Below, one piece after another: positions 8,980 to 32,901 of a stretch of 64,000 bases of DNA (the stretch's first letter is position 1; each line of letters begins with the position of its first letter). Made by a program: the position numbers and the translations under genes. The notes below the pieces were generated by a model, which saw only the letters and a program-made list of their open reading frames with translations, was not told where the DNA came from and made no database searches. The DNA is taken from contig NC_086376.1 of assembly GCF_036588685.1 (NCBI RefSeq), positions 76,859,630 to 76,923,629 of the forward strand, written 5' to 3'. This stretch comes from Mytilus trossulus. Lineage: Eukaryota.

Positions 8980-11900
8980 ATGTTCAAAGACAGTTTAGCG
9001 ATAAGTAGAGTTATTGGTACTGTGTTGGTTGGAGGTAAGCGTGTTGACACAACATGATATAGGGAAATCGATAATATGAGGCAGGCATAACCTGTAAATG
9101 GGGACGAAGTCTGTATGAATTAGTTTTTTGTAACTTAAATATTTTGTTAACAGAAACGGAAATACCGTAACGTTTCCGATTTTGGTTCTGTTGTTAGGGA
9201 TTTTAGTTGTGACGTTATTTAAGTTATGACGTCAAATGTAATGAAAACAAAGAAACGCTATCATCAGGTAACGTTTTTTCATATCAAGGAATTTAATATT
9301 AAAAATGAAATTGGTATTGCGTTCCTTCCTATTTATACTAGACTGATAAATATATATTTTACTCGGCAAAGATTCATACAAACAAAACCGGAAAAAGGAA
9401 GTACATTGTAGATTTCTGCGCAGGTCCGGGATTTCAAAACATGACATAAAAAAATGAATGATTTTGAGTTCATTAGTACAATGAAAACTTCGGGAAATTT
9501 TTCCGAATTTTTTTTTTATTGAATTTTCTACTGTTTTTGGGGACTTCGTCCCCATATAAAATTAATGTTAAAAACTTTTTTTGTCAGTTTCAACTGAGTT
9601 GTCTGTTTTCACATGCACAGTTCCAAGTTTTAAATTATTTTTCATTTGAAATGCATTGTAATATGAGGGGGGCATTACCTTTGAAAGGGGGTGAAGTCTA
9701 TGAATTTGATATTGACTTATTGTTGTAATTTATTTCAAACATATATATTTAAATTCAAATTCTGTGAAGGTTCATCATAACAAATGGACAAATATGGATG
9801 TATTTAATGCCAAAATTACATTTTTGGTGTATGGGGTGATTGAAAGTTGCATGTAAGTCGAGTAGGAATGACAAGAATCATTAATTATGTCAGGTTAATG
9901 GAATAGTTGTCAAGGTTGTAGTAAAATTGTATCGTAAATATTTTTTCAATTAGATCAGTAAAGCCGATGAGACATTTAAGTGTTTGCACTCTTGTTAAAA
10001 AACATATTCGTTATGGCATGTATGGGTGAAAAGAACAAATTCTGACAAAGTTTCTTTTAAAATTAACATGCAAAAAACTACGTGATTTCATGAATAAGAA
10101 CAATGACATTTATTTTTCTGTGTATTTGTTTTCTGGAAGAATTGCTTTAATGATGCAAGTACAAAAAGAAGGGCAAAAGATACCAGAGGAAGAGTCAAAC
10201 TCATAAATTGAAAATAAACTAGCTTTGTGATGGCTGAAAATGAAAAATACATACTGACAAATAATAGTACACAAAAAACAACATTGAAAAATAAAGACTG
10301 AACAACACAAACCCAACCAAAAAACTGGGGGTGATCTCAGGTGCTCTGGTAGGGTAAGCAGATACTGCTCTACATGTACAGTAATTACTAGAAATGGATA
10401 ATGTAAAATTATGAAACCAACAGTCTCTGTCAGTAATGCACAACTTTATTGAATGTACATGTATCTATCTGATATTCCAGAAACTGTTTCTGCTACAAAA
10501 ATTCAAAAGAAAGCATTTGTTCAGATTGTCTAGATACAGATTTTTTATGCATATAGAAAAAAGATATTTTAACATTTGAAATTCAATTTTTCAGGCTTGG
10601 CAGCATATTTATATCTTAGATTTAAAGACACAAAGAAGTATAAACCATATAAAAGAAAAAAGGAAATATTCCTTATAGACACTGTTGAAGATTATGAAAG
10701 TTTTATTAATACTGTCACAATTGAAAAGGTTAGTTTTTTTGGTGGTACAAACTTAATTTGAGGACACACATGTATAAGGAAAATTTGAAGCATTTTAAAA
10801 AACACTTTAACTTTCTCAAATAAATTTGAAGAAATGTTTTTTTTTCTTTTCTTATATTTTCTTATTAAATTTGAATGGCTACTTGGAACATAGTACCTTT
10901 ATTATGAAATCACAAACTATTTCTTTTTAAAAGGCTACAAGTTATTTATTCAACTGTCGTGACTGTGTTCAGAAAGTATTGCAAATATTGTTACTCATAT
11001 TGTTTCATAAAATCCTGAATATTGAAAAAATGATGTTCTTACTTCTGACATATTTCAGGTTTTAGGACTAGATTGTGAATGGGTGTCCTTTAGTGGTAAG
11101 AGGCGTCCTGTTGCTTTGTTACAATTGGCTACACAACTGGGACAATGTGCATTGATTCGTTTGGATCGAATGGACTCTTTTCCTAAATCATTAAAAGATA
11201 TATTGGCAGATAAAAGGTAAATGTTTTAGTTATGATGTTATCATCAGCCAGTGGAGCAAACTTCAGTACATATATATTGCAAAAGATCAGACAGACATAC
11301 AAGACATACAATGTATTTGCAAGAAGTTATACAGAAAGACAAAAGCACATACACACAAAGAGTAATGACAAGATGTTACACACCTATATAGACAAAAACA
11401 CACACATACATAGACAAAATCCTACCCATGCATCAACAAAAAATTAAAATATCACACATAGACCAAAGACTATCTTTTGAAAAAGACTACCAATAAAAGT
11501 TCCTATAGTTTTAGTTTCTACATCATTGCTGAACAAAATTGATCAACCAATATATATGTCCTGAGACAAAAACAATGAGAAGAGTTGCGAGGACATACAG
11601 CAATTTATTGAAAGTTTATAATGATGTAATTGTCATTTTGTATGACCTAGATCACTGATACATATATTCTGGAAATTGGGTGACTTGAAATAAGGATGAA
11701 TGCTAACATTTTAATGCTGCTGGCAGCATTGAATAGATGGGAATTCAGAATTATCATTTACAATCTTTGTTTGAAACCTGTTTTAAAGTAAGTTAATTTT
11801 CTAGGCTATCTAACAATGACACTTGATAATGGTATAAATAAGAGAAACTGTTTATTGTTAATTTTTATGATATAATATTTCTTATCGCTATTTTGTGCAT

Positions 11901-14900
11901 TTTTCCTTTGATCTTTTTTTGTGATAATTTTCATATTATGCTTCTCGCTTGAGATGGAAAAATTATCGCTAGAAACTAAGGAGGCCACGTGGCGTTGCTA
12001 ACGAAATTGACATGAAATTGACAACGTCGTCATAGGTAAAATAGCGATAAACAGATTATCATTGGTCATCTCAACTCGATTGCTTTTCTCACTTTCGCTG
12101 TACCAGCTCAAGCAAGAAAATCAACCTCGTTGAGATGATCAACGATAATCTATAAATATATTTAGATTTTAAATTGTAGATAGTCTACTGATAAAAATTT
12201 TAAAGCTTTGAGTAATGAGACTGTTTCAAGATTATTCTTAAGTTTAGATTTTATTCATGTGTCTCTATGTTTACTGTCTTTAGTATACTGAAAGTAGGAG
12301 TTGCAGTTAAAGAAGATGGCAAAAAACTTCATCTTGATTATGGGCTAGTAGTAAATGGATGTGTAGACTTAAGACATGTCCTTAATAGAGTCAGAGGAAT
12401 ATACACCTGGTATGCTAAAGCTTTGTAGTCTTTTGTAGTTCATTCAGTATGTACAAAGCTAAGGGTTTAAGATTCTTTGTAGCAGGAATGGAAAAACATA
12501 AAACTTGATTTTTTCAGTCTTATTAAAAAATCACCAAAATCAGGTTTGTGGGTTCATAAATCAACAAATTAAAAAAAATAGAGCCTCTGGCATATTGCAT
12601 CCACTGACATAGTTAAACAAGATAGGCATATACAAGTACTCTCAATAGTTACAAATCTGCTATAGAATACAAGATGGTGTCTTATTTATATACATCAAAG
12701 AATTGTCTCTATCATTGATTTACCAAAACAATTGGGAAAAAAACAAACATGAAACTTGAACAATATATTATGATATAACATACATAACAGTTTAAAGTTT
12801 AGAAAATTATTCTTCATGCTAGTAATGTTAACTGTTAGTGATGAATATAACTTATCCAGTAGTGTTGTTTTTCAGTCGTAGTAAAGGACTACAGGGCCAA
12901 GCTGAGAGTATATTAGGAGTAATGTTAGATAAAAGTAACCGTATAAGATGTGGAGACTGGGAAGCTGATGATTTTTCACAAGAACAGGTAACCTATGATT
13001 TAAAAAGTACACAACTAGAAAATGCAAATTTCACAACCATTCTTAAGATTTATAGAGTATACAATTACGCTTAACAAAAAGATTTCTTTTACATTTGTTA
13101 AATGGGGAAAAATATCCTATTGATGTGAGAACTATGAATGGTACATAGTTTTACTTTGTGGTTCACTCAAGATACTTGTCTAGAATTGTATTTATCTCTT
13201 CTTTCACATGCTTTGGAAAGTTTCTAATTAAAAAGAATAAAGTCATGTTAGCTATACTGACAAGTCTGACATAAACATAAAAAAGGCCATGTGGTATTGC
13301 CAATGAGACAACTACCCACCAAAGTTTATGTAGTGGAAGTAAGTAATTAAATGTTGTTCATCAAAAATGGACATTTGTTTGTTCATGTAATGTAAACTGT
13401 ATTTTATTTCTAATTTTAGATAGAATATGCAGCCAATGATGCGCTAGTAGGTGTAGATATATTTATGAACTTAATCTTGGCCAAAATGTGGGGCAAGAAA
13501 CCAGATATTAATATAGAAGATATTTTCACCATTGTTGATGAAACAGAATTTTGGACCTTTACGAGGTCTTTGGTACAAGGGACAGTAGATGTTAATGTTG
13601 GAGGAGCATGGAATTCTAAAAATCCTGCTTACAAAGGACCACAACTAACAAATGATGAAGAGGTTTGGAAATAACCTTTTATTAACTTTTTACCATGTTT
13701 TAATTATTATTAATACATTTAGTAACAAGTTCAGAAACCATATAGTCAGCACTCTGAAATGAAAAATGTAAAAACAATTCAATCAAGAAAACTGATGGCC
13801 TAATTTAAAACAATACAAATTACAAAAAAAATAAAATATGACAGACATTAACCAACAACATCCAGTGAATTACTGGCTGCTGACTTACACACATGTTTAA
13901 CTTGTCTGCTTAAAGATTATGGTGGGGTTATAAAATAAACATGTTTGCGATTGCTCAAATATTTCTCTAACCTTAGATAGTGATGTTTTAAACAGCACAA
14001 CATCAGAACAAACTATAAATTCATTTGTAAATGGCTTAACTCAATAGTTGGTTCAAAGTACAATAAAAAAATCACATAAAAACTATTCTTTGGTCTGATA
14101 AATAGTGATCTAATTGAAGATCACATCAGGATCACATCACATCATCATAATTATTCTATAAAGAAGGTTCTGAAGGCAACATTATTACAAAAAGACAAAA
14201 ATGAATTATTTACTTCCAGATATCTGTCAAAGATAAAGAAACAAGAGCTTATGTATTACGACAACGGCCATTATACTACAACTGTTACCTTTTAGCTCCT
14301 GATGGAGAAAGTCTGTGTACCTGTGATATAAAAAAGGCAGAGTGGTATATAGAAAAGGGTTTAGCAGGTATATTGATACTTATCATGCTAATAGCCAGAT
14401 CCAATCTTATCAATTAAACTTTCTATTAGATTGTTACGTAAGTTATAGAAATACAAACTCAAAGAACTATGTTCTCACTTCTTTTGTTGAAACACTTGAA
14501 AAAGTCTGGCCAACACAACTTTTATTCAATTTTAATATTTGAGAAGTAAGATTACAGCACTATTCACAAGTTGAATCTTAGCTTTTCTTTGAATTGGAAA
14601 TCACAGTATTTCCTTGCAACCTGAGTTGCATATTAAAAACACTTGATGAGCTTTATAATGACATCTGCTCTTTACAAAAATATTATTTGTATGTTTCAGA
14701 CAAAGTAAATGATGACCCATTCACAGTTCAATTAAAATTTGAACCAGCTGGTCGTCCGGCATCTAAAGATGATTATTATTTACAAGAGAAAGAAAACATT
14801 TGTGTAGTTTGTGGATCAAAAGAATCCTATGTACGAAAGCAAGTAGTTCCTAAAGAATATAGAAGGTAAAATATTTCATTGATTTTTGGTATCTTTGTCT

Positions 14901-17900
14901 TACACATGACAAAAAACCAAAATATTATCCCAATGGTCATCATGACGCAAAAAAGAAAAGAAAAAAAAGGCACTATTAAAAACAATTTTTAAACAGACAC
15001 GTTTCTGTGAGGCAAAAAGACTGCTGGTACAATAATATTTGTGTATAGGGATAGACAGACAGAATTAAGGAGAAGGGTTTGATCTGTTTCTGAGGTAGTG
15101 TAAGCTAAAGGACCACTGTAATGGTGTATGGAATGATTTTTAGGTATACATGTTTCTCTGGCATGGTTCATATGACTGAACTCATTCTGATGGCAATTGA
15201 TAATGTGAAGTGGATGCTATACTTATAATAAAACTCGTATTACAGACTTTTAACAAAAATTCAATCTGAATCATAAGTAAAGCAGTTAAGACAATTGATA
15301 TCAGCATATGCACTCTTGTGTTTTGGCAATTAACTAGATTATTAAACTTTGTCATTGGCTTTATTTACTGGTACATATATTTCAGATATTTTCCTCCATC
15401 ACTGAAGGACCATGCCTCCCATGATATACTGTTACTATGTATGTCATGTCATGTTAGGAGCACACAGTATGATACAACTCTTAGGTACCAGTTAGCAGAT
15501 GAATGTAATGCACCTATAGATGAGGGATCTGGAACTAAACAATTAAGTGACCAGGACTTACAAAAAGTTAGATCAGCTGCAAGGTAAATATATATTTTGA
15601 CTTAAAATTGCACTATTTGTTAAATATATTTCTCTTTGAGTGTTCCAGATGAAGGTAAATTCAAAAAAGTGCTTTCGAACATGAAAAATATCAAGTGCTT
15701 TTTTTATGCCATGTCATAGTGGCCATTTATTTGTAAAACAAAATGTCAAAAAAAATGTTTGAAGGATTTATTTATTCCTGTAGCAAAATTAAGATGTTCA
15801 TCATATACTATAGTATAAATATTAGCTAGATATGCACAAAAGTGTGTGAAGTTGTCTGGATCTGAAGGTATGGTTGAATTCAAGTTCTTTAGACCAAGTG
15901 CCTGTTATACTTTTACAGTCCTCTGTAATAAACTGGGATTAATCCAATTCAAATATTACAGTTATGCTTAAGGGTGGTCATTTGTTGTCTGTTATTTCCT
16001 GAGCAAAGCTATCTAAAAAAAGCAATTTGTAAAATTTGTATGACTTTGAATTATGTGAGACTTTTTATGAGAACATGCAATTTAGCTCTTGAAACTTGTT
16101 TTGCAGAAGACTGTTAGTTAACACATAGTTAGTTTTTTGTGGCTTTATGTAGTGATCTATAGTGCAGTTTGGTTATTGGCTAATAAGAACTGCAATTTTC
16201 TTTTATAGAGCATTGTTAAATCCAAAAGCTAAAATTCCTGAATTAAGAAAGACAGAATTAAAGAAGACATTAGAAGATTTTTATGGAATAACAGATTTCT
16301 CACCTGAAATACTGACACAGGCAGCAGAAATTGAATACAGGTATGATCTGCTGTAATTAAGTGCCAGTTTTTCACTCTTCCAGTCTGTTGTTTATATGAA
16401 ATCTAGTATTTCTCCATGAACATTTGTACTGCAACTTTTTCAACTATCAAATATTCTTGAAGTACGTCTGTTTTGATGGAGTACTATTTTTATACAACTT
16501 TCGTCCTATATTGCTATCACGTTGGTGTCGTGGTCTGCGTCATCGTCGTCCGAATACTTTCTGTTTTCGCACTCTAACTTTAGTAAAAGTGAATAGAAAT
16601 CTATGAAATTTTAACACAAGGTTTATGACCACAAAAGGAATGTCAGGATTGATTTTGGGAGTTTTGGTCCCATCAGTTTAGGAATTAGGGGCCAAAAAGG
16701 GCCCAAATAAGCATTTTCTTGGTTCTCACACTATAAATTTACTTTAACAGTCAGGGGCGTTACTTAAACAAGTTATTTTTTTTAGTTACTTATATAAGTA
16801 ATTTTTGTTTTTGAAAATAATAAAATAACTTAATAGAGTTATTTTAATTTTCAATAGAAACATAGACTAAATGTAGTTTTCATGATTTTAAACAACATTT
16901 TGTATCATAAAATAAAGAAATTATCAGATTTGAGAGGAGTATAGAGATAAAGGGTTACTTTAGAAATAATGACAAAAATATTACTTGAATAAGTTATTTT
17001 ATACAAATTTGATTTTTTTTTAGCAATTACGCTTATTCAAGGCACATATGTAATTGATTCCGGTTACGAATTATAAATAACTTAAGGTCTTAATTAATTC
17101 ACAAGTATCTATCTATTTATATCAGTCTACCTTCAAGATTTTAGAGGAAAATGATAATTTAATAGTCCCAAGAGACCAATTTTTGACCCAGAAGCGTTGG
17201 TATGAAAGATAAGTGGGTCAGAAAGTTAGTTAGTGTTTCGGAAGAATTAGTTTTTATATATCAAGGGAAAAATAACCAGATGACTGAAAATTATTAAAAG
17301 CTAGTAAAATCTGTATTATTGGACACCTATAAAAATAATATTCAGAAAAATAACTTATATAAGTTATATTTAAATAAGCCTCGTTTTCAACATTACTTGT
17401 ATAGGTAATTTTAATTGTTACATGTTTAAGTAATACCCCTGACTGTTTAAGTAAATAGAAATCTATAAAATTTTGACACAAGGTTTATGACTACAAAAGA
17501 AAGGTTGGGATCAATTTTGGGAGTTTTGGTTATAACAGTTTAGGAAATAGGGCCCAAAAAAGGGCCCAAATAAGCATTATTCTTGGTTTTCGCACAATAA
17601 CTTTTCTATAAGTAAATAGAAATCAATGAAATTTAAACACAAGGTCTATAACCACAATAGGAAGATTGGGAATGATTTTGGGAGTTGAGGTCAGAACAGT
17701 TTAGGAAAAAGGGGCCCAAATAAGCATTTTCTTGGTTTTGGCACCAAAACTTTAGTATAAGTAAATAGAAATCTATGAAATTTTAACACAAGGTTTATAA
17801 CCGAAAAAGGAAGGTTGGAATTGATTTCAGGAGTTTTGGTCCCAACAGTTTAGGAATAAGGGGCCCAAAGGGTCCAACATTAAACTTTGTTTGATTTCAT

Positions 17901-19324: not shown

Positions 19325-19362
<38 letters not shown>

Positions 19363-22300
19363 CGAATACTTTTAGTTTTCGCACTCTAACTTTAGTAAAA
19401 GTGAATAGAAATCTATGAAATTTTAACACAAGGTTTATGACCATAAAAGGAAGGCTGGTATTGATTTTGGGAGTTTTGGTCCCAACATTTTAGGAATTAG
19501 GGGCCAAAAAGGGCCCAAATAATCATTTCTTGGTTTTCGCACTATAACTTTAGTTAAAGTTAATAGAAATCTATGAAATTTTGACACAAGGTTTATAACC
19601 ACAAAATAAAGGTTGGGATTGATTTTGGGAGTTTTATTTTCAACAGTTTAGGAATTAGGGGCCAAAAAAGGGCCCAAATAAGCATTATTCTTGGTTTTCG
19701 CACAATAACTTTAGTTAAAGTAAATAGAAATCAATGAAATTTAAACACAATGTTTATGACCACAAAAGGAAGGTTGGTATTGATTTTGGGAGTTTCGGTC
19801 CCAACAGTTTAGGAATTAGGGGCCAAAAAGGGACCCAAATAAGCATTTTTCTTGGTTTTCGCACCATAGCGTTAGTATAAGTAAATAGAAATCTATGAAA
19901 TTTAAACACAAGGTTTATGACTATAAAAGGAAGGTTGGTATTGATTTTGGAAGTTTTTGGTCCCAACAGTTAAGAAAAAAGGGGCCCAAAGGGTCCAAAA
20001 TTAAACTTTGTTTGATTTCATCAAAATTGAATAATTGGGGTTCTTTAATATGCCGAATCTAACTGTGTATGTAGATTCTTAATTTTTGGTCCCGTTTTCA
20101 AATTGGTCTACATTAAGGTCCAAAGGGTCAAAAATTAAACTTAGTTTGATTTTAACAAAAATTGAAACCTTGGGGTTCTTTGATATGCTGAATCTAAAAA
20201 TGTACTTAGATTTTTTATTATTTGCCCAGTTTTCAAGTTGGCCCAAATCGGGGTCCAAAATTAAACATTGTTTGATTTCATCAAAAATTGAATAATTGGG
20301 GTTCTTTGATATGCCAAATCTAACTGTGTATGTAGATTCATAATTTTTGGTCCAGTTTTAAAATTGGTCTAAATTAAAGTGCAAAGGGTCCAAAATTAAA
20401 CTAAGTTTGATTTTTACAAAAATTAAATTCTTGGGCCTCTTTGATATGCTGAATCTTAACATGTACTTAGATTTTTGATTATGGGCCCAGTTTTCAAGTT
20501 GGTCCAAATCAGGATCTAAAATTATTATATTAAGTATTGTGCAATAGCAAGTCTTTTCAATTGCACAGTATTGTGCAATGGCAAGAAATATCTAATTTCA
20601 CAATATTGTGAAATAGCAAATTTTTTTTTAATTAAGAGTTATCTTTCTTTGTCCAGTATAGTAAGCAAGAAATATCTGCAAGAATTTTTTTTAATTGGAG
20701 TTATCTTTCTTTGTCCAGAATCAACTTAAATCTTTGTTATATACAATATACAATGTATATTCACTTTTTACTACCAACTGATAAATTTGAATAATCTTTA
20801 CCATTCAGTGATAACAAGCAGTTTTTTTACATCATGTATTTAAATGAGTAGTAATTGTTGCAAACTCCATTAGAATATTTTAATTGAAATTAGTTTTGGA
20901 ATAAGGGAAAGGGGGATGTGAATAAAAAATTGGGTTAAATTTTTCTCATTTGAAATTTCATAAATAAAAAGAAAATTTCTTCAAACATTTTTTTGAGAGG
21001 ATTAATATTCAACAGCATAGTGAATTGCTCTAAGAGAAAACAAAAATTTTAAGTTCATTTGAATACATTCATTCTGTGTCAGAAACCTATGCTGTGTCAA
21101 CTATTTAATCACAATCCAAATTTAGAGCGGAATCCAGCTTGAATGTTGTGTCCATACTTGCCCCAACCGTTCAGGGTTCAACCTCTGCGGTCGTATAAAG
21201 CTACGCCCTGCGGAGCATCTGGTTTTACATCTTTTATGATGTGTAACCATAGCAACAAATTAGGCCCTATATCAACACCATCTATCAGAGAGAACAAGTT
21301 GTAACAAAATTGTTCAATATCAATGTATAACGTAAGGGTACCCAAATTGTAATGAGTACCCAAATTACACCTATTTAGCAAAAATAGCAGTGGAAATCTT
21401 AAAAGATTTCCTAGAGACTAAACAAGTTGTATTTCAATGATCTGATAGTATCCACGTCTTTCAACATAGGTAAATATATTTAGATATACACGCAACGTTT
21501 ACAGTATTTATCAACAGATGAAGTGTTTACTGAAAAAGCAAAATGTACTGAAACATTGCCATGCGACATCATCAAAACGTCATCTTTTTAAAATTAGCAA
21601 TTACAATATGTTTCAAGTATCCATTTCTTAAAAAAAGAAAAGTCAACATGGACAAATATCCTATTGTTCAAAATATTTGAAAAAAGTAAACAAATGCTCT
21701 GTTATTCAACTTTTGACGATGCAAATTTTAGCATGGATGCGATTTGGGTACTCCTCATTACAGAATCATTGATGATTGAAATCAAATTGATGTACCTACA
21801 TGTATATAATAAAGAAGGATATGGCTACAAAATAAACACAAAATGGAAATGTTTGTCTTGATCATAAAAAAACGTAGTCGGAAAAATGTCAAAATAGGTG
21901 CAATTTGGGTACTGTCACGTTATGTTTGTGAAAATTATGATTTATTTTAGCTTTCTTCATTAAAGTGTTGACAATTTAGCCAATGTTAACTAAGAAAACA
22001 TTACATAGGAACCAAAATATGTTATAAGCAACCAAAATGTAGGAACTAACAATTATGGGTTTATATGCTCCATAGAAAATGAGGTGACATTTAGTTGTAC
22101 TCTTGTTTGTCTGTACCTCTGTCTGTCTGTATGTCTCAAAATTTGTTTCCATTCTCTAACTTTGGTTTGCCTGAAATCTGAAATCCATTACTGTCTAAGT
22201 ATAGAAGTTTCCAGGAGTGATTCTGTATACACTTCTTTGCTTACGGTAACACATTTATAACTTTCATGCCTCATCTTGACATTGATTTGTACACATCATT

Positions 22301-25300
22301 GGTTACAAGCTGGTAAAATCTATCATTTTATAAAACAAAGACAGAGAAACAAAGGTACAAGTTACCTCAATTTGGGATTGTATAGTCAGTGGTTTTTACT
22401 CCAAAAATTTTAAATTGCCAGGCAGGGGTGCAGGTTATAGAGAAGGATAATCAAGAGAAAAAAAATAACTATTAAAATGAAAATGTTTATGCTTAGGCTG
22501 TTAAGGGTCTTAAATAAAGTGCCTCCCATCCCCCATCTGTTTAATTTTGAAATAATTGTAATGTACTTCTGGCCAGCTCAATCCCTTGTTATTCAATTAC
22601 ACTTTCTAGGGTTGATAACAAGAACTATGAACCACATGGTAAACTGGTGGTTAGATATATGGAAAAAAATGGAGGATTACATACGTTTGAAAAAAGATGG
22701 AGGACAAATTTCATAAGCACAATGAAACCCCAGTTCCTTCCAAAATATTGGTCCATACATCACAGACATGAGCAACATAAACAATTAGAGGTCATTGAAT
22801 GAGCTGGAAGGTCACACATTGTGTAAGTAACAAACCTTGTAATAGATTGTTCAAATCCTGGCAATTAGGTTAAGCTAGCCATGGTGTTTTGCATGCCCTA
22901 AAGTCATTATTCTCCCTGTAGGTTATTCATTCTGGGACAGAACTTTACTTTCTTTTTTGATTGCAAGATTTTAACCAAAAGAGACCAAATATTTCATTGG
23001 TTTGCCACTTTCACTTGATTAATAAAAATGGAGATTTGTCTGTATTGAATTTGGAAACATGAACCTCTCTGAAAAAGTACAAATTTGAGGCCAGATCGTC
23101 TTTTTTCTCGACTGAATTTGATTGATGGGATTTATTTTTCATCTGATTCTTTTCTGTACATGGTATTTTTTCTTTAAAACTCTTTAAAGCATTAGTGATT
23201 TTGTTTGGTGTTTGAATAATAAATAAAGTAATTCTTGATGGAATCTGTTTTTAAACAAACATGATGTCATAGACCATAAAAGGCAGTAAATACTATGGAA
23301 ATTTAATTTTGACATCATAAACTTCCAAATTTCAGACACAATATATCATTGACTTCAATAATCAGTTTTGACAGAATTAACACTTTCTGTATACTGTCTG
23401 CATGTGTATCAGTGATCACTAAATCACCTATAAGAATTTCAGAAGAATGTTTTTAATGCTCTTTATGCCTTTAATCATGGTGTCCAGCCTATGGATAGTT
23501 CAGATGGCCACTAAATTTAAACTTTTATTATCGGTAATCATCTTCTCCCCTTTTAGCTTCATGTAGATTGGCTTAGCTTTGTTTATTTTATTACACTTTA
23601 AACACAGGCACTCGTCTCAGAAAAAAATTTCTTATTTGTCTTTATAAAAAAAAAATCTGAGAAAAGTGCCTTTGACTTTAAACCAATTAGGATTTTTTTA
23701 ACTGAATATTTCAATGAAAATATGACCTTGGAATTAACATTTTATCCACTTTTGATAGGATTTGTTTCTTTCTCATCTTGTAATGTTTGAAATGTTTTGA
23801 GATGGCTAGCATGTAGTGATCAAATGTTACTGGCAGAGGAAGCCATATGGGCCTGAAAATCCTACTATGGGCTAGTGTGTAGTGATCAAATGTTACTGGC
23901 AGAGGAAGCCATAGTGTCCTGAAAATCCTACTATGGGCTAGTGTGTAGTCATCAAATGTTACTGGCAGAGGAAGCCATATGGGCCTGAAAATCCTGCTAT
24001 GGGCTAGTGTGTAGTAATCAAATGTTACTGGCAGAGGAAGCCATGGGGTCCTGAAAATCCAACTATGGGCTAGTGTGTAGTGATCAAATGTTACTGGCAG
24101 AGGAAGCCATAGGGTCCTGAAAATCCTACTATGGGCTAGCGTGTAGTGATCAAATGTTACTGGCAGAGGAAGCCATGGGGTCCTGAAAATCCTACTATGG
24201 GCTATCGTGTAGTGATCAAATGTTACTGGCAGAGGAAGCCACGGGGTCCTGAAAATCCAACTATGGGCTAGTGTGTAGTAATCAAATGTTACTGGCAGAG
24301 GAAGCCATGGGGTCCTGAAAATCCTACTATGGGCTAGTGTGTAGTGATCAAATGTTACTGGCAGAGGAAGCCATAGGTTCCTGAAAATCCTACTATGGCC
24401 TATTGTGTAGTCATCAAATGTTACTGGCAGAGGAAGCCATAGGGTCCTGAAAATCCTACTATGGGCTAGTTTGTAGTCATCAAATGTTACAGGCAGAGGA
24501 AGCCATATGGGCCTGAAAATCCTACTATGGGCTAGTGTGTAGTGATCAAATGTTACTGGCAGAGAAAGCCATATGGTTCTGAAAATCCTACTATGGGCTA
24601 GTGTGTAGTGATCAAATGCTACTGGCAGAGGAAGCCATAGGGTCCTGAAAATCCTACTATGGGCTAGTGTGTAGTGATCAAATGTTACTGGCAGAGGAAG
24701 CCATACGGTCCTAAAAATCCTACTATGGGCTAGCGTGTAGTGATCAAATGCTTCTGGCAGAGGAAGCCATATGGGCCTGAAAATGCTACTATGGGCTAGC
24801 GTGTAGTCATCAAATGTTACTGGCAGAGGAAGCCATAGGGTCCTGAAAATCCTACTATAGACTAGCGTGTAGTGATCAAATGTTACTGGCAGAGGAAGCC
24901 ATACGGTCCTGAAAATCCTACTATGGGCTTGCGTGTAGTCATCAAATGTTACTGTCAGTGGAAGCCATAGGGTCCTGAAAATCCTACTATGGGCTAGCGT
25001 GTAGTCATCAAATGTTACTGGCAGAGGAAGCCATAGGGTCCTGAAAATCTTACTATGGGCTAGCGTGTAGTCATCAAATGTTACTGTCAGAGGAAGCCAT
25101 AGGGTCCTGAAAATCCTACTATGGGCTAGCGTGTAGTCATCAAATGTTACTGGCAGAGGAAGCCATAGGGTCCTGAAAATCCTAATATGGGCTAGCGTGT
25201 AGTCATCAAATGTTACTGTCAGAGGAAGCCATGGGGTCCTGAAAATCCTACTATGGGCTAGCGTGTAGTCATCAAATGTTACTGGCAGAGGAAGCCATAG

Positions 25301-28300
25301 GGTCCTGAAAATCCTACGATGGGCTAGTGTGTAGTGATCAAATGTTACTGGCAGAGGAAGCCATGGGGTCTTGAAAATCCTACTATGGGCTAGTGTGTAG
25401 TGATCAAATATTACTTGCAGAGGAAGCCATAGGTTTCTGAAAATCCTACTATGGGCTAGTGTTTAATGATCAAATGTTACTGGGAGAGGAAGCCATAGGG
25501 TCCTGAAAATCCTACTATGGGCTAGTGTGTAGTGATCAAATGTTACTGGCAGAGGAAGCCATAGGGTCCTGAAAATCCTACTATGGGCTAGTGTGTAGTG
25601 ATCAAATGTTACTGGCAGAGGAAGCCATAGGGTCCTGAAAATCCTACTATGGGCTAGTGTGTAGTGATCAAATGTTACTGGCAGAGGAAGCCATGGGGTC
25701 TTGAAAATCCTACTATGGGCTAGTGTGTAGTGATCAAATATTACTTGCAGAGGAAGCCATAGGTTTCTGAAAATCCTACTATGGGCTAGTGTTTAATGAT
25801 CAAATGTTACTGGCAGAGGAAGCCATAGGGTCCTCAAAATCCTACTATGGGCTAGTGTGTAGTGATCAAATGTTACTGGCAGAGGAATCCATAGGGTCCT
25901 GAAAATCCTACTATGGGCTAGTGTGTAGTAATCAAATGTTACTGGCAGAGGAAGCCATGGGGTCCTGAAAATCCTACTATGGGCTAGTGTGTAGTCATCA
26001 AATGTTACTGTCAGAGGAAGCCATATGGGCCTGAAAATGCTACTATGGGCTAGCATGTAGTGATCAAATGTTACTGGCAGAGGAAGCCATAGGGTCCTGA
26101 AAATCCTGCTATGGGCTAGTGTGTAGTCATCAAATGTTACATGCAGAGAAAGCCATATGGGCCTGAAAATCCTACTATGGGCTAGTGTGTAGTCATCAAA
26201 TGTTACTGGCAGAGAAAGCCATATGGTTCTGAAAATCCTTCTATGTGCTTGTGTGTAGTGATCAAATGCTACTGGTAGAGAAAGCCATAAGGTCCTGAAA
26301 ATCCTACTATGAGCTAGCGTGTAGTGATCAAATGCTACTGGCAGAGGAAGCCATATGGGCCTGAAAATCCTACTATGGGCTAGCGTGTAGTCATCAAATG
26401 TTACTGGCAGAGGAAGCCATAGGGTCCTGAAAATCCTACTATGGGCTAGCGTGTAGTGATCAAATGTTACTGGCAGAGGAAGCCATACGGTCCTGAAAAT
26501 CCTACTATTGGCTAGCGTGTAGTGATCAAATGTTACTGGCAGAGAAAGCCATATGGTTCTGAAAATCCTACTATGGGCTAGTGTGTAGTGATCAAATGCT
26601 ACTGGCAGAGGAAGCCATAGGGTCCTGAAAATCCTACTATGGGCTAGTGTGTAGTGATCAAATGTTACTTGCAGAGGAAGCCATACGGTCCTGAAAATCC
26701 TACTATGGGCTAGCGTGTAGTGATCAAATGCTACTGGCAGAGGAAGCCATATGGGCCTGAAAATGCTACTATGGGCTAGCGTGTAGTCATCAAATGTTAC
26801 TGGCAGAGGAAGCCATAGGGTCCTGAAAATCCTACTATGGACTAGCGTGTAGTGATCAAATGTTACTGGCAGAGGAAGCCATAGGGTCCTGAAAATCCTA
26901 CTATGGGCTAGCGTGTAGTGATCAAATGTTACTGGCAGAGGAAGCCATACGGTCCTGAAAATCCTACTATTGGCTAGCGTGTAGTCATCAAATGTTACTG
27001 GCAGAGGAAGCCATAGGGTCCTGAAAATCCTGCTATGGGCTAGTGTGTAGTCATCAAATGTTACAGGCAGAGAAAGCCATATGGGCCTGAAAATCCTACT
27101 ATGGGCTAGTGTGTAGTCATCAAATGTTACTGGCAGAGAAAGCCATATGGTTCTGAAAATCCTACTATGTGCTTGTGTGTAGTGATCAAATGCTACTGGT
27201 AGAGAAAGCCATAAGGTCCTGAAAATCCTACTATGGGCTAGCGTGTAGTGATCAAATGCTACTGGCAGAGGAAGCCATATGGGCCTGAAAATCCTACTAT
27301 GGGCTAGCGTGTAGTCATCAAATGTTACTGGCAGAGGAAGCCATAGGGTCCTGAAAATCCTACTATGGGCTAGCGTGTAGTGATCAAATGTTACTGGCAG
27401 AGGAAGCCATACGGTCCTGAAAATCCTACTATTGGCTAGCGTGTAGTCATCAAATGTTACTGGCAGAGGAAGCCATAGGGTCCTGAAAATCCTACTATGG
27501 GCTAGCGTGTAGTGATCAAATGCTACTGGCAGAGGAAGCCATATGGGCCTGAAAATCCTACTATGGACTAGTGTGTAGTGATCAAATGTTACTGGCAGAG
27601 GAAGCCATAGGGTCCTGAAAATCCTACTATGGGCTTTTGTGTAGTGATCAAATATTACTGGCAGAGGAAGCCATAGGGTCCTGAAAATCCTACCAACCTG
27701 TGGCAGGAAAACTGACAAAGCTAATAAAAGTGCTGTTCCTTTTCTTTTTTTGTTGTGCATGTACTAAGTTTGTGTCATTTATGGATACCCCATATCCTCG
27801 GTTTTTCTGAAGCTAGCTATATAGTCAATTAGGTTTGACTGGTGCATGTCTCGAGTCTACAACCTCAGTGTTGACAGGCTTTTGGTACTGTAGTTACTAT
27901 ATACCACTCTGCCATCATGACCAATCTATCTTTAAGGAATAAACATAATTTTTTAAAAAAATCAAATTTTACAAAAGGCTTATAATTACACATTTATATG
28001 GTAAATAAAATCAAAAACCGGTGTCCACTGGTTTACTTTGTTAACTGTGAGCACAGTAACTTTTAACCTATCAATTGTTTGCCTTTTTCATATAACCTTG
28101 TTGCAGATGTCAGAGTTAAAAACTTGATTAATTTGTTTGTGCAACCTTGTAACTTTTTACTTGTTGCAGCTGTACATGTGTCAATACAATTATTTAACTT
28201 TCCTCTGGTAACATGTTGACATCCCCATCATAGTACAAATGAAACATGTATTTTTTATAAGATTTAGCTGCAAAACAAGTGCATGGACCCCTATGTTTAT

Positions 28301-30451
28301 GCCCCCCACTGTAGTGGAAGGGGCATTAAGTTTTACCCTTGTCTGTCTTTCTATCCATAGGTAAATTCTCAAGTCTGAAAGTTCTTTTCCATTCTCTTAC
28401 TTTAGTTTGCCTCAACAAAATGCTTTGAAACAAATGGAAAAATTGCTGAAAAAATTAAGTAACCCAACCAATTTCCTCTGCCATATTCAGCTGTGTTCAG
28501 CAGAGCAATTTGTTAAAAAATAAGAAAACCAGATTTTAAGTTTTTTTCAGCCTGTGTTATGTATTAAACTACTCTGAAAACATATATTGAAAGCATTTCA
28601 GAATACTGTAGATGTAAAATTTAATAGATTAGTGTCCTAACATTAAGATTTTATAAAGTATTCAATCCTGCCACTGTCCCCAGTCCACAACTTACTGTAT
28701 GCCCATTTGTTTTAAAATTAATTTGAGCAAATGTTTTTGGTACCAGATTAATCATATATCTAACAAAATATGGGTAATAGTTAAGCCAGAAGTGTTTAAA
28801 CATTTTTGCAACCAGTTTAATTAAAAAAAGTTTTATAGATCTGACTGTTTAAAACTTTCTTTTTTGTCAGTTCAAAGCAAGTTTATTGTTTTCATTTACA
28901 TTATAGCCATTTATGATAATAGAATGAAATTTGTTATTTCCACAAGTTCAAAGCATGGTTATGGTATGATTTCAGTACAAAAGACATTTATAATTATAAA
29001 ACCACTGCCTTAAAGGTTAAGGTGTCGGGCTATAACCCATGAGTTGGGGATTATTCTCTATTTTTTGCCCCTGGATCCTAAAAAAGTGCACATGCATCTG
29101 TTTCCTTTTAAAAAAGGTCTCAATATTATGCAGTCTTCTTTTTGTCTCTTGAATAACCTCGTGGCCAGTTTGTAATCAAAATTTAAATTTTTCATTGAAA
29201 AAAAAACATGGAACAGATGAATATTTAATTCTATATAAGTGGTTACAGGTGCAAAATACATTTTCTTGTTGATTTGTTTTGAAGACTGTTATTTTTGTTT
29301 GCAGGACATGTCATTGAAACAATTCAAGGTTTCGTTAAACCTTGCCACTGATCTATACTGAACCTTAAACAGCTGTGAAACAACATTGTTTGTGACCTTC
29401 TGCTGTTGTTTTTTTATTTGGTCGGGTTGTTGTCTCTTTGACACATTCCCCATTTCCATTCTCAATTTTATAAGTTTTTGCTTATCAATTTTTGGCGCTG
29501 AGCATTTTTGAGCAAATTTTGTAGGTTTCAATTTTATATGCCTGTTTACAGGTTTTATTATGGTATACTCTTGTCTGTCTGTTAGTCTGTGTGTCTGTCC
29601 ATCTTCAACATGTTGAACAATATGTCAAAAGCACTAAAACCAATCTGCATGAAATTTTGGTGAATTGTTTGTATCTATTGATGCGAGCTCCCTTTTGATT
29701 TTCATAAATTTTAGATTGTATGTTTTTTTATTCATTAAACATGTTAAAAGTAAGATGATTTTCCTGTTTTCTTACTATAACTTAGAAATTCTTTGTGTGA
29801 AATTTTCATGAAACTTTGGCGAATTGTTTACCTTTATTGACATAAGCTCCCTTTTGATTTTCTTATAGCCTATCACAATGCAAAATTGTTCTTGTAAGTT
29901 ATTATTTACTGTAAATTTACAAGTTATTGCAAGGTTTTTATAAATGGGAACAGTAATCAACTGTGTGACTGTGTGAGTATCTCAAAGGATAAGAATTCCC
30001 AATTGATATTTTAAACATACATCTGTTTAGAGATTTTTCTGATACATGTACATGTGTTGCAATAATTAATCTCACATTTTTGTCCATTATTTAAAAAAAA
30101 AAAACATTAATGAATACAAACAATAATTTCTGAATTTACAGAATTTGGGATCATAAAAGAAGCAAGTTTTCTTTCATAGGATAATTCATTCTATGATTAT
30201 TGTGTGGAAATTTTACATTTTCTAAGAGTCATATTTCTGTTTGTTTCAGGGTTGACAATAGAGATTATATTCCCCATGGCAAGCTGGTTGTGAGAAGTAT
30301 AAAGAAGAGTGAAGGATTACACGAGTTTCAGAAAAGATGGCGTCAGCATTTTGTTAATACAATGAAACCACAATATCTGCCAACAAATTGGTCTATTGAT
30401 CACAAACATGAAAGATTAGAAACATTTACTGATTTTGTTTTATCAAACTAG
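8980..30451 (+). CDS. EXD2: Exonuclease 3'-5' domain-containing protein 2; shared exons 8980-9034, 10595-10728, 11059-11216, 12284-12409, 12876-12987, 13420-13662, 14220-14367, 14700-14865, 15386-15583, 16209-16340, then last exon 22610-22802 (554 aa) or 30250-30451 (557 aa)
   Basis: All junctions are GT-AG and phase-consistent. N-terminal hydrophobic anchor (VIGTVLVGGLAAYLYL), DEDDy ExoI VLGLDCEW, LKVGV...DLR, ExoIII YAANDA, and C-terminal HNH-like region LYYNCYLLAPDG...CVVCG...VVPKEYR...HDILLLCMSCH...PHGKLVV...RWRxxF...WSIxH, all characteristic of EXD2. Confidence 0.93.
11870..12155. mobile_element. Short double-hairpin non-autonomous element in EXD2 intron 3
   Basis: TTATCGCTATTTT (11882) pairs with AAAATAGCGATAA (ending 12050); AGATTATCATTGGTCATCTCAAC (12053) pairs with GTTGAGATGATCAACGATAATCT (ending 12151). 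Confidence 0.5.
16748..17445. mobile_element. MITE nested in the older HINE
   Basis: TIRs CAGTCAGGGGCGTTACTTAAACA / TGTTTAAGTAATACCCCTGACTG; flanks duplicate TTTAA (or TTA if the termini are one base longer); host sequence resumes afterwards. Confidence 0.85.
18430..18898. mobile_element. MITE with a 4-bp AATA TSD nested in the older HINE
   Basis: Perfect 19-bp TIRs GGTGTCATACCACCAATTA / TAATTGGTGGTATGACACC; the empty site TGTGCAATAGCAAG is seen in the sister copy near 20538. Confidence 0.9.
19271..21222 (+). mobile_element. Complete non-autonomous Helentron-like (HINE) element
   Basis: 13-bp subterminal inverted repeats TTTATACGACCGC (19271) / GCGGTCGTATAAA (21187-21199), (GTC)n microsatellite, central tandem repeats, 3' hairpin GCTACGCCCTGCGGAGC, inserted in a T-run with no TSD. 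Confidence 0.85.
21328..21922. mobile_element. Degenerate MITE
   Basis: Imperfect TIRs TAACGT..GTACCCAAATT..CACCTATTT versus AAATAGGTGCAATTTGGGTAC..ACGTTA. Confidence 0.55.
22610..22802 (+). CDS. EXD2: EXD2 alternative last coding exon A (proximal)
   Basis: Acceptor actttctag|G in phase 2 matches the donor at 16340; encodes VDNKNYEPHGKLVVRYMEKNGGLHTFEKRWRTNFISTMKPQFLPKYWSIHHRHEQHKQLEVIE*; AATAAA at 23021 and 23222. Confidence 0.8.
23802..27693. repeat. 66-bp tandem satellite/minisatellite, about 59 copies
   Basis: Consensus ATGGGCTAGTGTGTAGTGATCAAATGTTACTGGCAGAGGAAGCCATAGGGTCCTGAAAATCCTACT; the register recurs exactly every 660 bp (24061, 24721, 25381, 26041, 26701, 27361), so there is no net indel. 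Confidence 0.98.
30250..30451 (+). CDS. EXD2: EXD2 alternative last coding exon B (distal)
   Basis: Acceptor ttgtttcag|G in phase 2; encodes VDNRDYIPHGKLVVRSIKKSEGLHEFQKRWRQHFVNTMKPQYLPTNWSIDHKHERLETFTDFVLSN*; AATAAA at 30520 and 30695. Confidence 0.85.
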
Positions 30452-30759
30452 TAATATATTGCTTCAATAGTCAGATGAGATGAAAATAAGCAAAAGGCTG
30501 TGATACCATTTTATATTGTAATAAAATGTAGGGTTCTAAAGAAAGATTTTGTTCTTATTGTTGTTATTGGTTTTTATAGGCATCTTACTTATATAGTAGT
30601 TATGACTTAAATTCATATGACTTAGATATGTTATACTTGTAAGGTGTACATACATTCATATTAAAGTTTAGGAAATGTGTCATTATACTAGAAAAATAAA
30701 AATTTATTTAATTTTAATCGTACAAAAGAAAGATAACTTGGTACCATGAAGCCATTTAA

Positions 30760-31562
30760 GGTCAAGGAACAGTAAATGGGCTATGTCACAGATTTTGCTA
30801 AAAAATTTGCATACAACCTTGGCTCGTTGAACTACAACTAAAAATCGAAAAAATAATACAAATATCTCTTTTATTATCTGAAAAATTGCAGATTGATTTC
30901 TTTTAATATGGGTGAATATTTGTATAGAAAGCACATAAAATCGGTGAAAAACCTTCTAAAATTTGTCTAAAAATCGCCAAATCTTTAATTCCACTCCATA
31001 GATATTTCTTAAAAAACTATATATTGTTGACACATAAATTTCTGTTTTAATGATATAAAATAATCAAAGGGTCACCGACTTCGTTTTTTGTCTAATAGTC
31101 AATTTGTTACCTTGTTGGTAGTGAAAACCGTCAAAAATCAATGTTTTACGGCCTGCAACGCGATAACGTTACGATTATTTTGACGTTTTGTTGGATTTTT
31201 TCACAAAGAACGCAACTTTAAATGAAGTATACGTTAAAACAAAGTCGGTGACCCTATCTTTATTTTGCATCATTATAACGAAAATTTATGTATCAACAAC
31301 ATATAGTTTTTTAAGAGAAATCTATGGAGTAGAATTAGAGATTTGGTGATTTTAAGACAAATTTTAGAAGGGTTTTCGCCGATTTAATGTGCTTTCTATA
31401 CAAATGTTCACCCATTTTGTAAGAATTCAATCAGTAATATTTCAAATGATAATTGAGGTAAATGCAATATTTTTTCGATTTTCAGTTGAAGTTCATCGAG
31501 CCAGAGTTGTATGCCAAATTTTACTGAAATCTGCGACATAGCCCATTTACTGTTCCTTGACC
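30760..31562. mobile_element. Foldback MITE with TTAA TSD (Kolobok-like termini)
   Basis: TTAA|GGTCAAGGAACAGTAAATGGGCTATGTC ... GACATAGCCCATTTACTGTTCCTTGACC|TTAA; inverted arms ~330 bp around a ~150-bp spacer. Confidence 0.88.
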
Positions 31563-32901
31563 TTAAGTGTCAAGCCACATTGACATTCTGTTTATTTTAA
31601 CAATTATTTAATCATCTTAGATATTTTTTTCATAAATTTTGTTTACAAAGTTGGTTTATATATAAAATTCAAAAAAAATACAAAAATATTTGTGTAGAAA
31701 TAAGGGTTTTTTATTCAAAGAAAATATCAGAAAATGAATTGTGACTTTATGTCCTGTGCCTTTTTTTCCGTGACTTTATGTCCTGTGACTTTCTGTCCTA
31801 CACTCTAATAGATTACCATGACTGTATCAGGCAAAACTTGTAGGAATTGCTGGTCATGAATGCTCTTCAACTTCACACTTTGTTGAGCCTTATTAACTTT
31901 TTCAATTTGAGCATCACTGATCATAGTGATGAGTCCGGTGCAAATACAAAACTTCCATCCTGGTGTCTTAGATAGTTAATCTAAAATTGTGAAGCTAACT
32001 GAATAACTTTAATTTGTTTCATAATTATTTCATTTCATTTGAGGTGACTAATAGATCCATTAGGCCGGGTGTATTAATATCTATCATTTATTACAGTTTA
32101 TTGTATGTTTATAATCTGTTCATATTTACACATGTCACTAAAATAAGCAATTTACTCTACCTATTTACAAATAATTATGAGTGGAAGGGGGTTAGCTGCA
32201 CTGTGTTAGATAACAGGATACCTTAAGTTATATAAAAAAAATCATACAGATATAGTAAGACTGGTTTAAATGGGATAAACTCAGCTGTGAATGATTATAA
32301 AGTGTTATTTAATATAAAACAAAGAAATGTATTCCTCTGTTGAAATATTTGCAACAAATGCTCTTTTTAAAGGTCCAATTCAGACCAATGAAAATATTTA
32401 TTGCAAGTCATAAAAAAAAAACCACATTCATGTACATGTAAATAAAGTATGTAAAAGCATGCATGTTAGATGAAAGGATACATGTAGTTAAAAAAAAAAA
32501 ATTATCATATAAATATTCTAAGACTGGTTTAAATGGGACAAAAACTGGTATTAATTAACATAGATATTGAAATTTTATATGACATTTAAAAGAAAATGAA
32601 AGAAAACTCACATATTTCACAAGTATCTAATCAAAAATATAAACGAGACAAGATGTGAATATCAATTAGGCAACGACCGATTTCACACACAAAAATAAAA
32701 TAAAAAAGCTGAATGTGCAATATGAAACAAAAGACAACTTTTCAAGTGCTTATAAAATAAATGTCAGATTCAGGTTCAAATGTAAATTATGTAGAAATGT
32801 TTTAAACAGTTTTCTTAGAGGACCATATAAGTTTTAATCATTTATTTCTGTCCCTTTACACATTATCCAATAGCAAATAATATGTTTAAATGAATGTTTG
32901 A

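What the first reader, a model, noticed from the sequence alone, without database searches (positions are those of the whole stretch)
22610..30451. EXD2 has two intact, diverged copies of its last coding exon: a candidate C-terminal isoform switch
Seen: the phase-2 donor at 16340 can splice in frame to either 22610 or 30250. Both exons begin RVDN, keep PHGKLVVR, GLHxFxKRWR, TMKPQxLP and WSIxHxHE, end in their own stop and have their own AATAAA. 35 of 54 aligned residues are identical with no indel, many conserved residues use different codons, and flanking intron/UTR shows no visible similarity. That pattern suggests an old duplication with both copies under purifying selection. Known: this exon encodes the conserved end of the EXD2 C-terminal (HNH-like/helical) region, and copy B retains the RWRQHF/WSxDH wording I recall from vertebrate EXD2, so A looks derived (RWRTNF, WSIHH). 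Inference: alternative last-exon choice yields two EXD2 proteins (554 and 557 aa) with different C-termini and 3' UTRs. I know of no description of this. Speculation: in a mussel with sex-linked mitochondrial inheritance, a mitochondria-anchored nuclease next to a sperm gene might use the copies in a sex- or tissue-specific way.
Basis: partly seen in the sequence, partly recalled or inferred. Interest (0 to 1): 0.82.

Follow-up and report, generated by a model that had tools for sequence, protein, structure and literature searches.

The report
Duplicated last exon of mussel EXD2
The mussel EXD2 nuclease gene really does carry two old, diverged, intact copies of its last coding exon that give two protein tails, but this isoform pair is already in the public annotation of four Mytilus species and belongs to a well-known kind of alternative splicing.

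Summary
Exon A (22610-22802) and exon B (30250-30451) both join in frame to the donor at 16340. They share 35 of 54 residues with no indel, and each ends in its own stop.

The GT-AG spliced CDS from the window translates exactly to Mytilus trossulus RefSeq isoform X1 (557 aa, B tail) and isoform X2 (554 aa, A tail). The same X1/X2 pair is annotated in M. edulis, M. galloprovincialis and M. californianus. So the isoforms are already on record, although I found no paper that describes them.

The duplication is old:
- Synonymous sites between A and B are saturated.
- A-type and B-type exons form separate clades that both include non-Mytilus mytilids.
- An origin inside the genus is rejected (AU p 0.0003).

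Evidence on each copy:
- B is slow-evolving and constrained as coding sequence: all 6 variant sites seen are synonymous.
- A evolves about three times faster than the shared part of the protein in Mytilus. It is nonetheless the tail found in transcript-sized contigs of three mytilid lineages.

A is probably not a separate terminal exon. It looks like a 213-nt stop-containing cassette exon with a GTAAGT donor 20 nt after its stop, spliced on to B.

This is an ordinary C-terminal substitution derived from tandem exon duplication. The link to sex-linked mitochondrial inheritance remains untested.

The parts
8980..15583 (+). EXD2 coding exons 1-9: 8980-9034, 10595-10728, 11059-11216, 12284-12409, 12876-12987, 13420-13662, 14220-14367, 14700-14865, 15386-15583. 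They encode the N-terminal helix, the DEDDy 3'-5' exonuclease domain and the Cys/His HNH-like region.
   Evidence: the GT-AG junctions reproduce P0181 and P0183 exactly. PF01612, E 3e-20; the fold matches the human EXD2 exonuclease domain (6K17/6K18).
16209..16340 (+). Coding exon 10, the last exon common to both isoforms. Its phase-2 donor is CAG|GTATGA.
22610..22802 (+). Exon A coding part: 1 nt plus 63 codons plus TGA. It gives the 554-aa isoform (RefSeq X2, A-type tail ending ...LEVIE).
   Evidence: The tail is identical to that of XP_063434724.1.
22803..22828 (+). The 20-nt tail after A's stop (22803-22822) plus the GTAAGT donor (22823-28). With this tail exon A is 213 nt (71 codons, phase 2 to phase 2) and can be spliced on to exon B.
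   Evidence: P0190 begins MSHSV|VDNRDY, which matches the window's RSHIV tail plus B. P0153 of another mytilid keeps SHI followed by a GT at the same spot.
30250..30451 (+). Exon B coding part: 1 nt plus 66 codons plus TAG. It gives the 557-aa isoform (RefSeq X1). In A-containing mRNA it would be 3' UTR.
   Evidence: a 1914-nt spliced contig enters B exactly at 30250; all 6 variant sites are synonymous.
30452..30543 (+). Short 3' UTR after B, with AATAAA at 30520-30525. Contigs end at 30498, 30523 and 30543.

Best explanation
This is the EXD2 orthologue of a Mytilus mussel; its sequence is identical to the M. trossulus RefSeq proteins. Its last coding exon was duplicated in tandem. This happened early in mytilid evolution, after the split from oysters and before Mytilus separated from other mytilid genera. 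Both copies stayed intact.

The exon encodes a short strand, two helices and a loop (residues about 492-545). The model places these confidently in the C-terminal domain that follows the Cys/His HNH-like region.

Two proteins result, identical for 491 residues and homologous but 35% different in the last 54 aligned positions:
- Splicing 16340 to 30250 gives the B-tail protein (557 aa). This tail is conservative and slow-evolving.
- Splicing 16340 to 22610 gives the A-tail protein (554 aa).

I infer that A is a frame-neutral 213-nt cassette exon. Its own stop lies 20 nt before a GTAAGT donor. A-containing mRNA therefore runs on into exon B and uses B's poly(A) site, and the stop is too close to the last junction to mark the mRNA for nonsense-mediated decay. 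Including or skipping A is then the switch.

The functional effect is inferred only. The fold is the same. The surface and motif residues differ: WSIDH versus WSIHH, FQKRWRQHF versus FEKRWRTNF, and different extreme tails. The most likely effect is a change in a binding or regulatory property of the C-terminal domain, not in the exonuclease core.
For: Shown:
- The two copies and their frames.
- The spliced CDS equals XP_063434723.1 and XP_063434724.1.
- X1/X2 pairs exist in four Mytilus species, plus CAG/VDI annotations.
- The whole genome holds only two copies.
- Between A and B, pS is 0.80 (saturated) and dN is 0.22.
- The A clade has 97/92 support. Both clades include non-Mytilus sequences. 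The AU test rejects a within-genus duplication at p 0.00027.
- A B-type exon ORF occurs in a non-Mytilus metagenome contig (P0194).
- A-type tails occur in transcript-sized Logan contigs encoding full-length proteins: P0192, P0162/3 and P0169/193.
- B sits in a spliced 1914-nt contig that enters it exactly at 30250.
- All 6 variant sites in B are synonymous, p about 5e-5, while the 3' UTR just behind diverges heavily.
- B diverges 3% between M. trossulus and M. californianus, against 6% for the shared part of the protein.
- Both isoforms are modelled with pLDDT 92-96 over the exon and the same secondary structure.

Inferred (cassette step):
- The GTAAGT donor at 22823 and the 213-nt symmetric exon.
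- The P0190 ORF needs two point changes from the window's A tail joined to B. The unspliced intron reading would need deletions that remove the acceptor.
- P0190 and P0192 share the longest-contig length of 2033.
- Contigs in X2 and X9 start exactly at 30250, as expected at a branch in the assembly graph.
Against: - No junction-level read evidence from this species was obtained for 16340->22610, 22822->30250 or 16340->30250. The single reads call covered only the B region, and the loose-end letters at 30250 were not listed.
- The 1914-nt contig fits either the skip form (193-nt 5' UTR) or a 5'-truncated A-included form.
- The runs are only guessed to be RNA.
- A evolves at 16-19% amino-acid divergence between M. 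californianus and the edulis complex, against 6% for the shared part of the protein. In the edulis complex it has lost a histidine kept in 87% of other animals. Relaxed constraint on A in Mytilus is therefore possible.
- The organisms behind the unnamed Logan and metagenome proteins are not known.
- The tree rests on 67 columns, and the tested group was named after a first tree had been seen.
- The fold models are driven by the alignment and cannot show a functional difference.
Confidence: 0.65

Rival explanations
1. One reading: A and B are two true alternative last exons, each with its own poly(A) site and 3' UTR. A-containing mRNA ends shortly after 22802.
For: AATAAA lies at 23021 and at 23218/23222 after A. 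Transcript contigs of other mytilids with an A tail (1993-2139 nt) leave little room for an added B exon plus UTRs. This form could also coexist with the cassette form.
Against: AATAAA occurs once per about 620 nt here by composition. A consensus GTAAGT donor sits 20 nt after the stop and makes the exon exactly 71 codons. P0190 reads the A tail joined to B. The post-stop SHI plus GT is kept in another genus (P0153).
Confidence: 0.22
2. Only the A-tail protein is made. B is always downstream of A's stop, so it is a fossil coding exon that now serves as 3' UTR. The X1 models would then be annotation artefacts.
For: Every transcript-sized contig in hand that encodes a full-length protein carries the A tail. 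No skip junction was seen directly.
Against: All 6 variant sites in B are synonymous third positions, while the adjacent UTR diverges about 10%. B is intact and 97-100% conserved across four Mytilus species. It is still 75-80% identical, with an intact acceptor, in a non-Mytilus relative. Isoform X1 was built independently in four RefSeq annotations and two other pipelines.
Confidence: 0.06
3. A is a decaying or noise exon in Mytilus, included at low level without function. B is the only functional tail.
For: A evolves about 3 times faster than the shared part of the protein and about 5 times faster than B in Mytilus. There is a long stem branch of 0.4. A nearly invariant His is lost in the edulis complex.
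Against: A keeps an open 63-codon frame of the same length in five Mytilus lineages and keeps nearly all strongly conserved positions. The A clade is the tail of full-length transcripts in three lineages. dN between A and B is only 0.22 against saturated dS.
Confidence: 0.06
4. Assembly artefact: a collapsed or duplicated haplotype creates a false second exon.
For: None specific. Mussel genomes are highly heterozygous.
Against: The copies differ at 35% of nucleotides, with saturated synonymous sites, and the flanks are unrelated. The same pair is present in four other species' assemblies.
Confidence: 0.01

Closest known systems
RefSeq 'exonuclease 3'-5' domain-containing protein 2-like' isoforms X1/X2 of Mytilus trossulus (XP_063434723.1 / XP_063434724.1). 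The same pairs exist in M. edulis, M. galloprovincialis and M. californianus, and as CAG2196970/1 and VDI72889/90.
   Same: Identical proteins: the window's spliced CDS translates exactly to both. The feature is therefore already on record in annotation.
   Different: The records are automatic models. No source I could search describes the two tails as products of a tandem duplicated exon, dates the duplication, or addresses how the exons are chosen (one search found no paper with EXD2 and Mytilus).
Tandem exon duplication-derived substitutions in human genes: 236 events, of which 77 are C-terminal, e.g. the swapped final coding exons of GNAO1 (PMC8373072; also PMC9741552, PMC9013439).
   Same: Adjacent homologous exons, ancient origin, isoforms identical except for a homologous segment, and purifying selection on the copies.
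   Different: The duplicated unit here is the stop-bearing last exon of EXD2, a gene for which no such event has been reported. The upstream copy appears to be included as a cassette exon with its own stop, not chosen in strict mutual exclusion. The lineage is mytilid bivalves.
[quoted passage not shown]
   Same: N-terminal helix, PF01612 exonuclease domain, Cys/His HNH-like region and the conserved C-terminal PHG...RWRQHF...WSVDH segment.
   Different: The paper describes no duplicated C-terminal exon. No solved structure covers the C-terminal region (the PDB hits cover only the exonuclease domain).

Membership tests
[quoted passage not shown] | DEDDy / DnaQ-type 3'-5' exonuclease domain | tested here: met
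   PF01612, E 3.4e-20, residues 46-213. Foldseek top hits are human EXD2 exonuclease domain 6K17/6K18 (E 4e-14, 33-37% identity) and WRN exonuclease with TM 0.82.
[quoted passage not shown] | N-terminal single membrane-anchor helix | tested here: inconclusive
   The AF2 model has one long helix at residues 2-31, with a hydrophobic stretch VIGTVLVGGLAAYLYL. No membrane-topology tool was run.
[quoted passage not shown] | Cys/His HNH-like region followed by the conserved C-terminal segment | tested here: met
   C360, C363, C399, C402 and H403 are nearly invariant in a 40-sequence alignment. The last-exon motifs H, G, VV, WR, F, M, P, LP, WS and H are conserved in 151 non-mytilid sequences and kept in both A and B. 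No Pfam model covers this part.
Tandem exon duplication-derived C-terminal substitution | Two adjacent homologous exons in one gene, same phase, each giving a complete protein | tested here: met
Tandem exon duplication-derived C-terminal substitution | Both alternative mRNAs are actually made | tested here: inconclusive
   A-tail transcripts were seen in relatives. B was seen in a spliced contig entering at 30250. Isoforms are annotated in four species. No junction counts were obtained for this species.
Tandem exon duplication-derived C-terminal substitution | Both copies under purifying selection | tested here: inconclusive
   B: 6 of 6 variants synonymous and 3% divergence. A: open frame and conserved motifs, but 16-19% divergence. 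A codon-level test was not possible without orthologous DNA.
Strict mutually exclusive exons | One and only one of the copies is present in any mature mRNA | tested here: not met
   P0190, from a congener's transcript-sized contig, reads A's post-stop tail spliced to B. This is inferred from a protein, not seen as DNA.
Alternative last exons with separate poly(A) sites | A poly(A) site used downstream of exon A | not tested
Only sequence motifs are available for A.

The most novel reading that the evidence does not exclude
The choice between the A and B tails of this mitochondria-anchored nuclease is regulated by sex or tissue (for example male germ line versus soma). It would then take part in the handling of paternal versus maternal mitochondria in mussels with doubly uniparental inheritance. 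The duplication has been kept in mytilids since before the genera split.
Probability: 0.04. Interest if true: 0.75.

Novelty: new member of a known kind. Interest (0 to 1): 0.3.

Why it matters
This would add one well-dated invertebrate example to the small class of isoform pairs born from tandem exon duplication, a class for which a function of both isoforms is thought likely. It points to the poorly understood C-terminal domain of EXD2 as the part that evolution chose to diversify. It also shows a tidy arrangement: the new copy carries its own stop 20 nt before a donor, so the old last exon serves both as coding exon and as 3' UTR. None of this overturns current knowledge, and the isoforms themselves are already annotated.

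Tried and rejected
I could not fetch the 2033-nt contig that should carry both P0192 and P0190, nor the contigs of the unnamed relatives.
- Two scans of metagenome contigs for A- or B-type exons found nothing. Synteny of A and B in another genus is therefore unshown.
- The single read-laying run was put on 27800-32800 in the hope of reading the letters joined to 30250. The loose-end table was swamped by a very abundant repeat at 29392-29473, and the row for 30250 was not listed. Only piece boundaries could be used.
- All laid runs are contigs with kind 'RNA?', so no depths, strands or tissue or sex information could be used.
- Pfam has no model for the last exon or the HNH-like exons taken singly.
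- A within-genus duplication was not rejected with the first data set (AU p 0.073). It was rejected only after adding P0194.
- Other apparent double hits in the library (P0009, P0024, P0078 and others) are an internally repeated model or insignificant second stretches, so no second lineage with this duplication was found.
- Misassembly was rejected (see rivals).
Searches used exon references or public protein ids. The join was only translated locally and compared with P0181 and P0183.

Full report
**Observation**

The donor after 16340 (CAG|GTATGA, phase 2) can be joined to two acceptors, at 22610 and at 30250. Either junction completes an Arg codon followed by VDN.
- Exon A reads 63 codons and then TGA at 22800-22802.
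- Exon B reads 66 codons and then TAG at 30449-30451.
- Over the first 54 codons, 35 residues are identical with no indel, and 17 of those 35 use different codons.
- DNA similarity (70%) is limited to 22603-22771 versus 30244-30411. The flanks are unrelated and no other EXD2 exon is repeated in the window.
- The whole assembly holds exactly these two copies.
- Only 2.2% of 63-codon frames are open by chance in this window.

**What the gene is**

tblastn and a GT-AG junction search place ten common coding exons between 8980 and 16340. Adding B gives a CDS that translates exactly to P0181 (XP_063434723.1, M. trossulus EXD2-like isoform X1, 557 aa). Adding A gives exactly P0183 (XP_063434724.1, isoform X2, 554 aa). 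This join was made only locally, to compare with public proteins.

The protein has these features:
- a PF01612 exonuclease domain;
- a fold that matches the human EXD2 and WRN exonuclease domains;
- a long N-terminal helix;
- nearly invariant Cys/His positions of the HNH-like region.

This agrees with the published architecture of human EXD2 (PMC6648332).

**Already annotated**

The 90% cluster around the Mytilus protein holds X1 (B tail) and X2 (A tail) pairs for M. trossulus, M. edulis, M. galloprovincialis and M. californianus. It also holds paired entries from two other annotation projects, CAG2196970/1 and VDI72889/90. A full-text search found no paper that mentions EXD2 together with Mytilus, so the event seems undescribed in prose.

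**Age of the duplication**

- Between A and B the synonymous proportion of differences is 0.80, which is saturated. dN is 0.22.
- A profile of A plus B found 867 relatives. The segment is the conserved PHG...RWRQHF...TMKP..LP..WSVDH end of animal EXD2.
- In a tree of this segment the mytilid sequences form one group next to oysters. They split into a B clade and an A clade.
- The B clade holds Mytilus B, P0190, the metagenome ORF P0194 and the long-branch P0003.
- The A clade (97/92) holds Mytilus A together with two other unnamed mytilid lineages and several metagenome ORFs.
- Holding all Mytilus A and B sequences together costs 25 log-likelihood units and is rejected (AU p 0.00027). Without P0194 the test gave p 0.073.
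- Discrete characters agree. All A-clade rows have His in place of the Asp of WSxDH. All B-clade rows have Gln in place of the Glu before KRWR.

The duplication therefore predates the split of Mytilus from other mytilids and follows the split from oysters. Two caveats apply: the alignment has 67 columns, and the relatives are unnamed.

**Constraint on the two copies**

Among four Mytilus species the shared 491 residues differ by up to 6.1%, B by 0-4.7% and A by 3-19%.

In the contigs laid on the B region, all six variant sites inside B are synonymous third positions. The expected synonymous fraction is 0.19, giving p about 5e-5. The 60 nt just after B's stop carry at least nine differences in the same contig. 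B is thus constrained as coding sequence, which argues that the A-skipping mRNA is translated.

A keeps its frame, its length and almost all strongly conserved positions. It evolves faster, however, and in the edulis complex it has replaced the His of RWRQHF. M. californianus and a coruscus-like transcript still have that His.

**Expression evidence**

- Transcript-sized Logan contigs (about 2 kb for 554-563 aa) encode full-length EXD2 with the A-type tail in a Mytilus congener (P0192) and in two other mytilid lineages (P0162/P0163, P0169/P0193).
- For the window itself, run X4 has a 1914-nt contig whose last 249 nt match 30250-30498 without a mismatch. Its first 1665 nt lie elsewhere, so it is spliced at B's acceptor.
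- Contigs in X2 and X9 begin exactly at 30250, as expected where an assembly graph branches.
- Contig ends at 30498-30543 fit the AATAAA at 30520.
- The 1914-nt contig fits either the skip form with a 193-nt 5' UTR or an A-containing form truncated by about 20 nt. This stays open.

**How A is used**

Twenty nucleotides after A's stop lies TGT|GTAAGT. With that donor, exon A is 213 nt, exactly 71 codons, and has the same phase at both ends.

P0190 is a 71-aa ORF from contigs whose longest length (2033) equals that of the A-tail protein P0192. It begins MSHSV and continues with the B exon. The window's A tail joined to B would read RSHIV followed by the same B exon, which is two point changes away. 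Deriving P0190 from the unspliced intron would need deletions that remove B's acceptor.

In another genus, the read-through ORF P0153 keeps SHI, followed by codons that must spell GTAYGG at the same place.

I therefore read A as a stop-containing cassette exon that is spliced on to B, so both isoforms share B's poly(A) site. The stop lies well within 50 nt of the last junction, which on the usual rule spares the mRNA from nonsense-mediated decay (established knowledge, not tested here). The AATAAA copies after A carry no weight, since the hexamer occurs once per 620 nt by composition. I give this step about 0.7. A separate poly(A) site after A may also exist.

**Structure**

AlphaFold2 models of both isoforms were built from 40-sequence alignments. 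Both give pLDDT 92-96 for residues 491-540 and the same elements: a strand at 491-493, helices at 500-511 and 514-529, a loop, and a low-confidence tail helix. The exon is thus part of the folded C-terminal domain, and the two tails are predicted to be structurally interchangeable. The models cannot show a functional difference. No solved structure covers this region.

**Comparison with what is known**

Isoform pairs made from tandem duplicated exons are a recognised class. A human survey lists 236 such substitutions, 77 of them at the C-terminus, for example GNAO1 (PMC8373072). The mussel EXD2 case is a new member of that kind, with a cassette-with-stop arrangement instead of strict mutual exclusion.

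**What could not be done**

- Two metagenome scans found nothing.
- The single reads call could not cover both exons within the 6000-letter limit, and its loose-end table did not list 30250.
- Tissue or sex specificity could not be addressed. The proposed link to doubly uniparental mitochondrial inheritance remains pure speculation.

**Verdict**

The feature is real and old, and both copies are probably functional. It is also already annotated and of a known kind. Interest is modest.

Noticed in passing
window 23804-27693: A 66-bp satellite of about 59 copies (93% matches) fills half of the interval between exons A and B. It reads as a spurious 655-aa ORF on the minus strand (25793-27760).
   Followed up: partly
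window 29392-29473: An approximately 80-nt element shows enormous word depth (up to 84,000) in all four laid runs, with many different flanks on both sides. It is a very abundant dispersed repeat (SINE/MITE-like) in the intron upstream of exon B.
   Followed up: no
window 55080-57161 (+): A single uninterrupted 693-aa ORF has four Cu/Zn superoxide dismutase stretches (PF00080, E 6e-40). It is a multi-SOD-domain protein gene downstream of EXD2.
   Followed up: partly
window 30640-31807: This stretch is covered by many short contigs at depth 50-600 in X1, X2 and X9 but not in X4, just beyond the EXD2 poly(A) site. It could be repeats or another transcript.
   Followed up: no
window 17556-20626: A block of tandem and interspersed repeats (periods 35, 135, 149, 161 and 260 bp, plus a CGT run at 19326-19362) lies in the intron between exon 10 and exon A.
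   Followed up: no
window 22098-22130 vs 29566-29598: A 33-nt match of 85% identity lies about 500-680 nt upstream of A and of B. It may be a last trace of the duplicated intron or a chance or repeat match.
   Followed up: no
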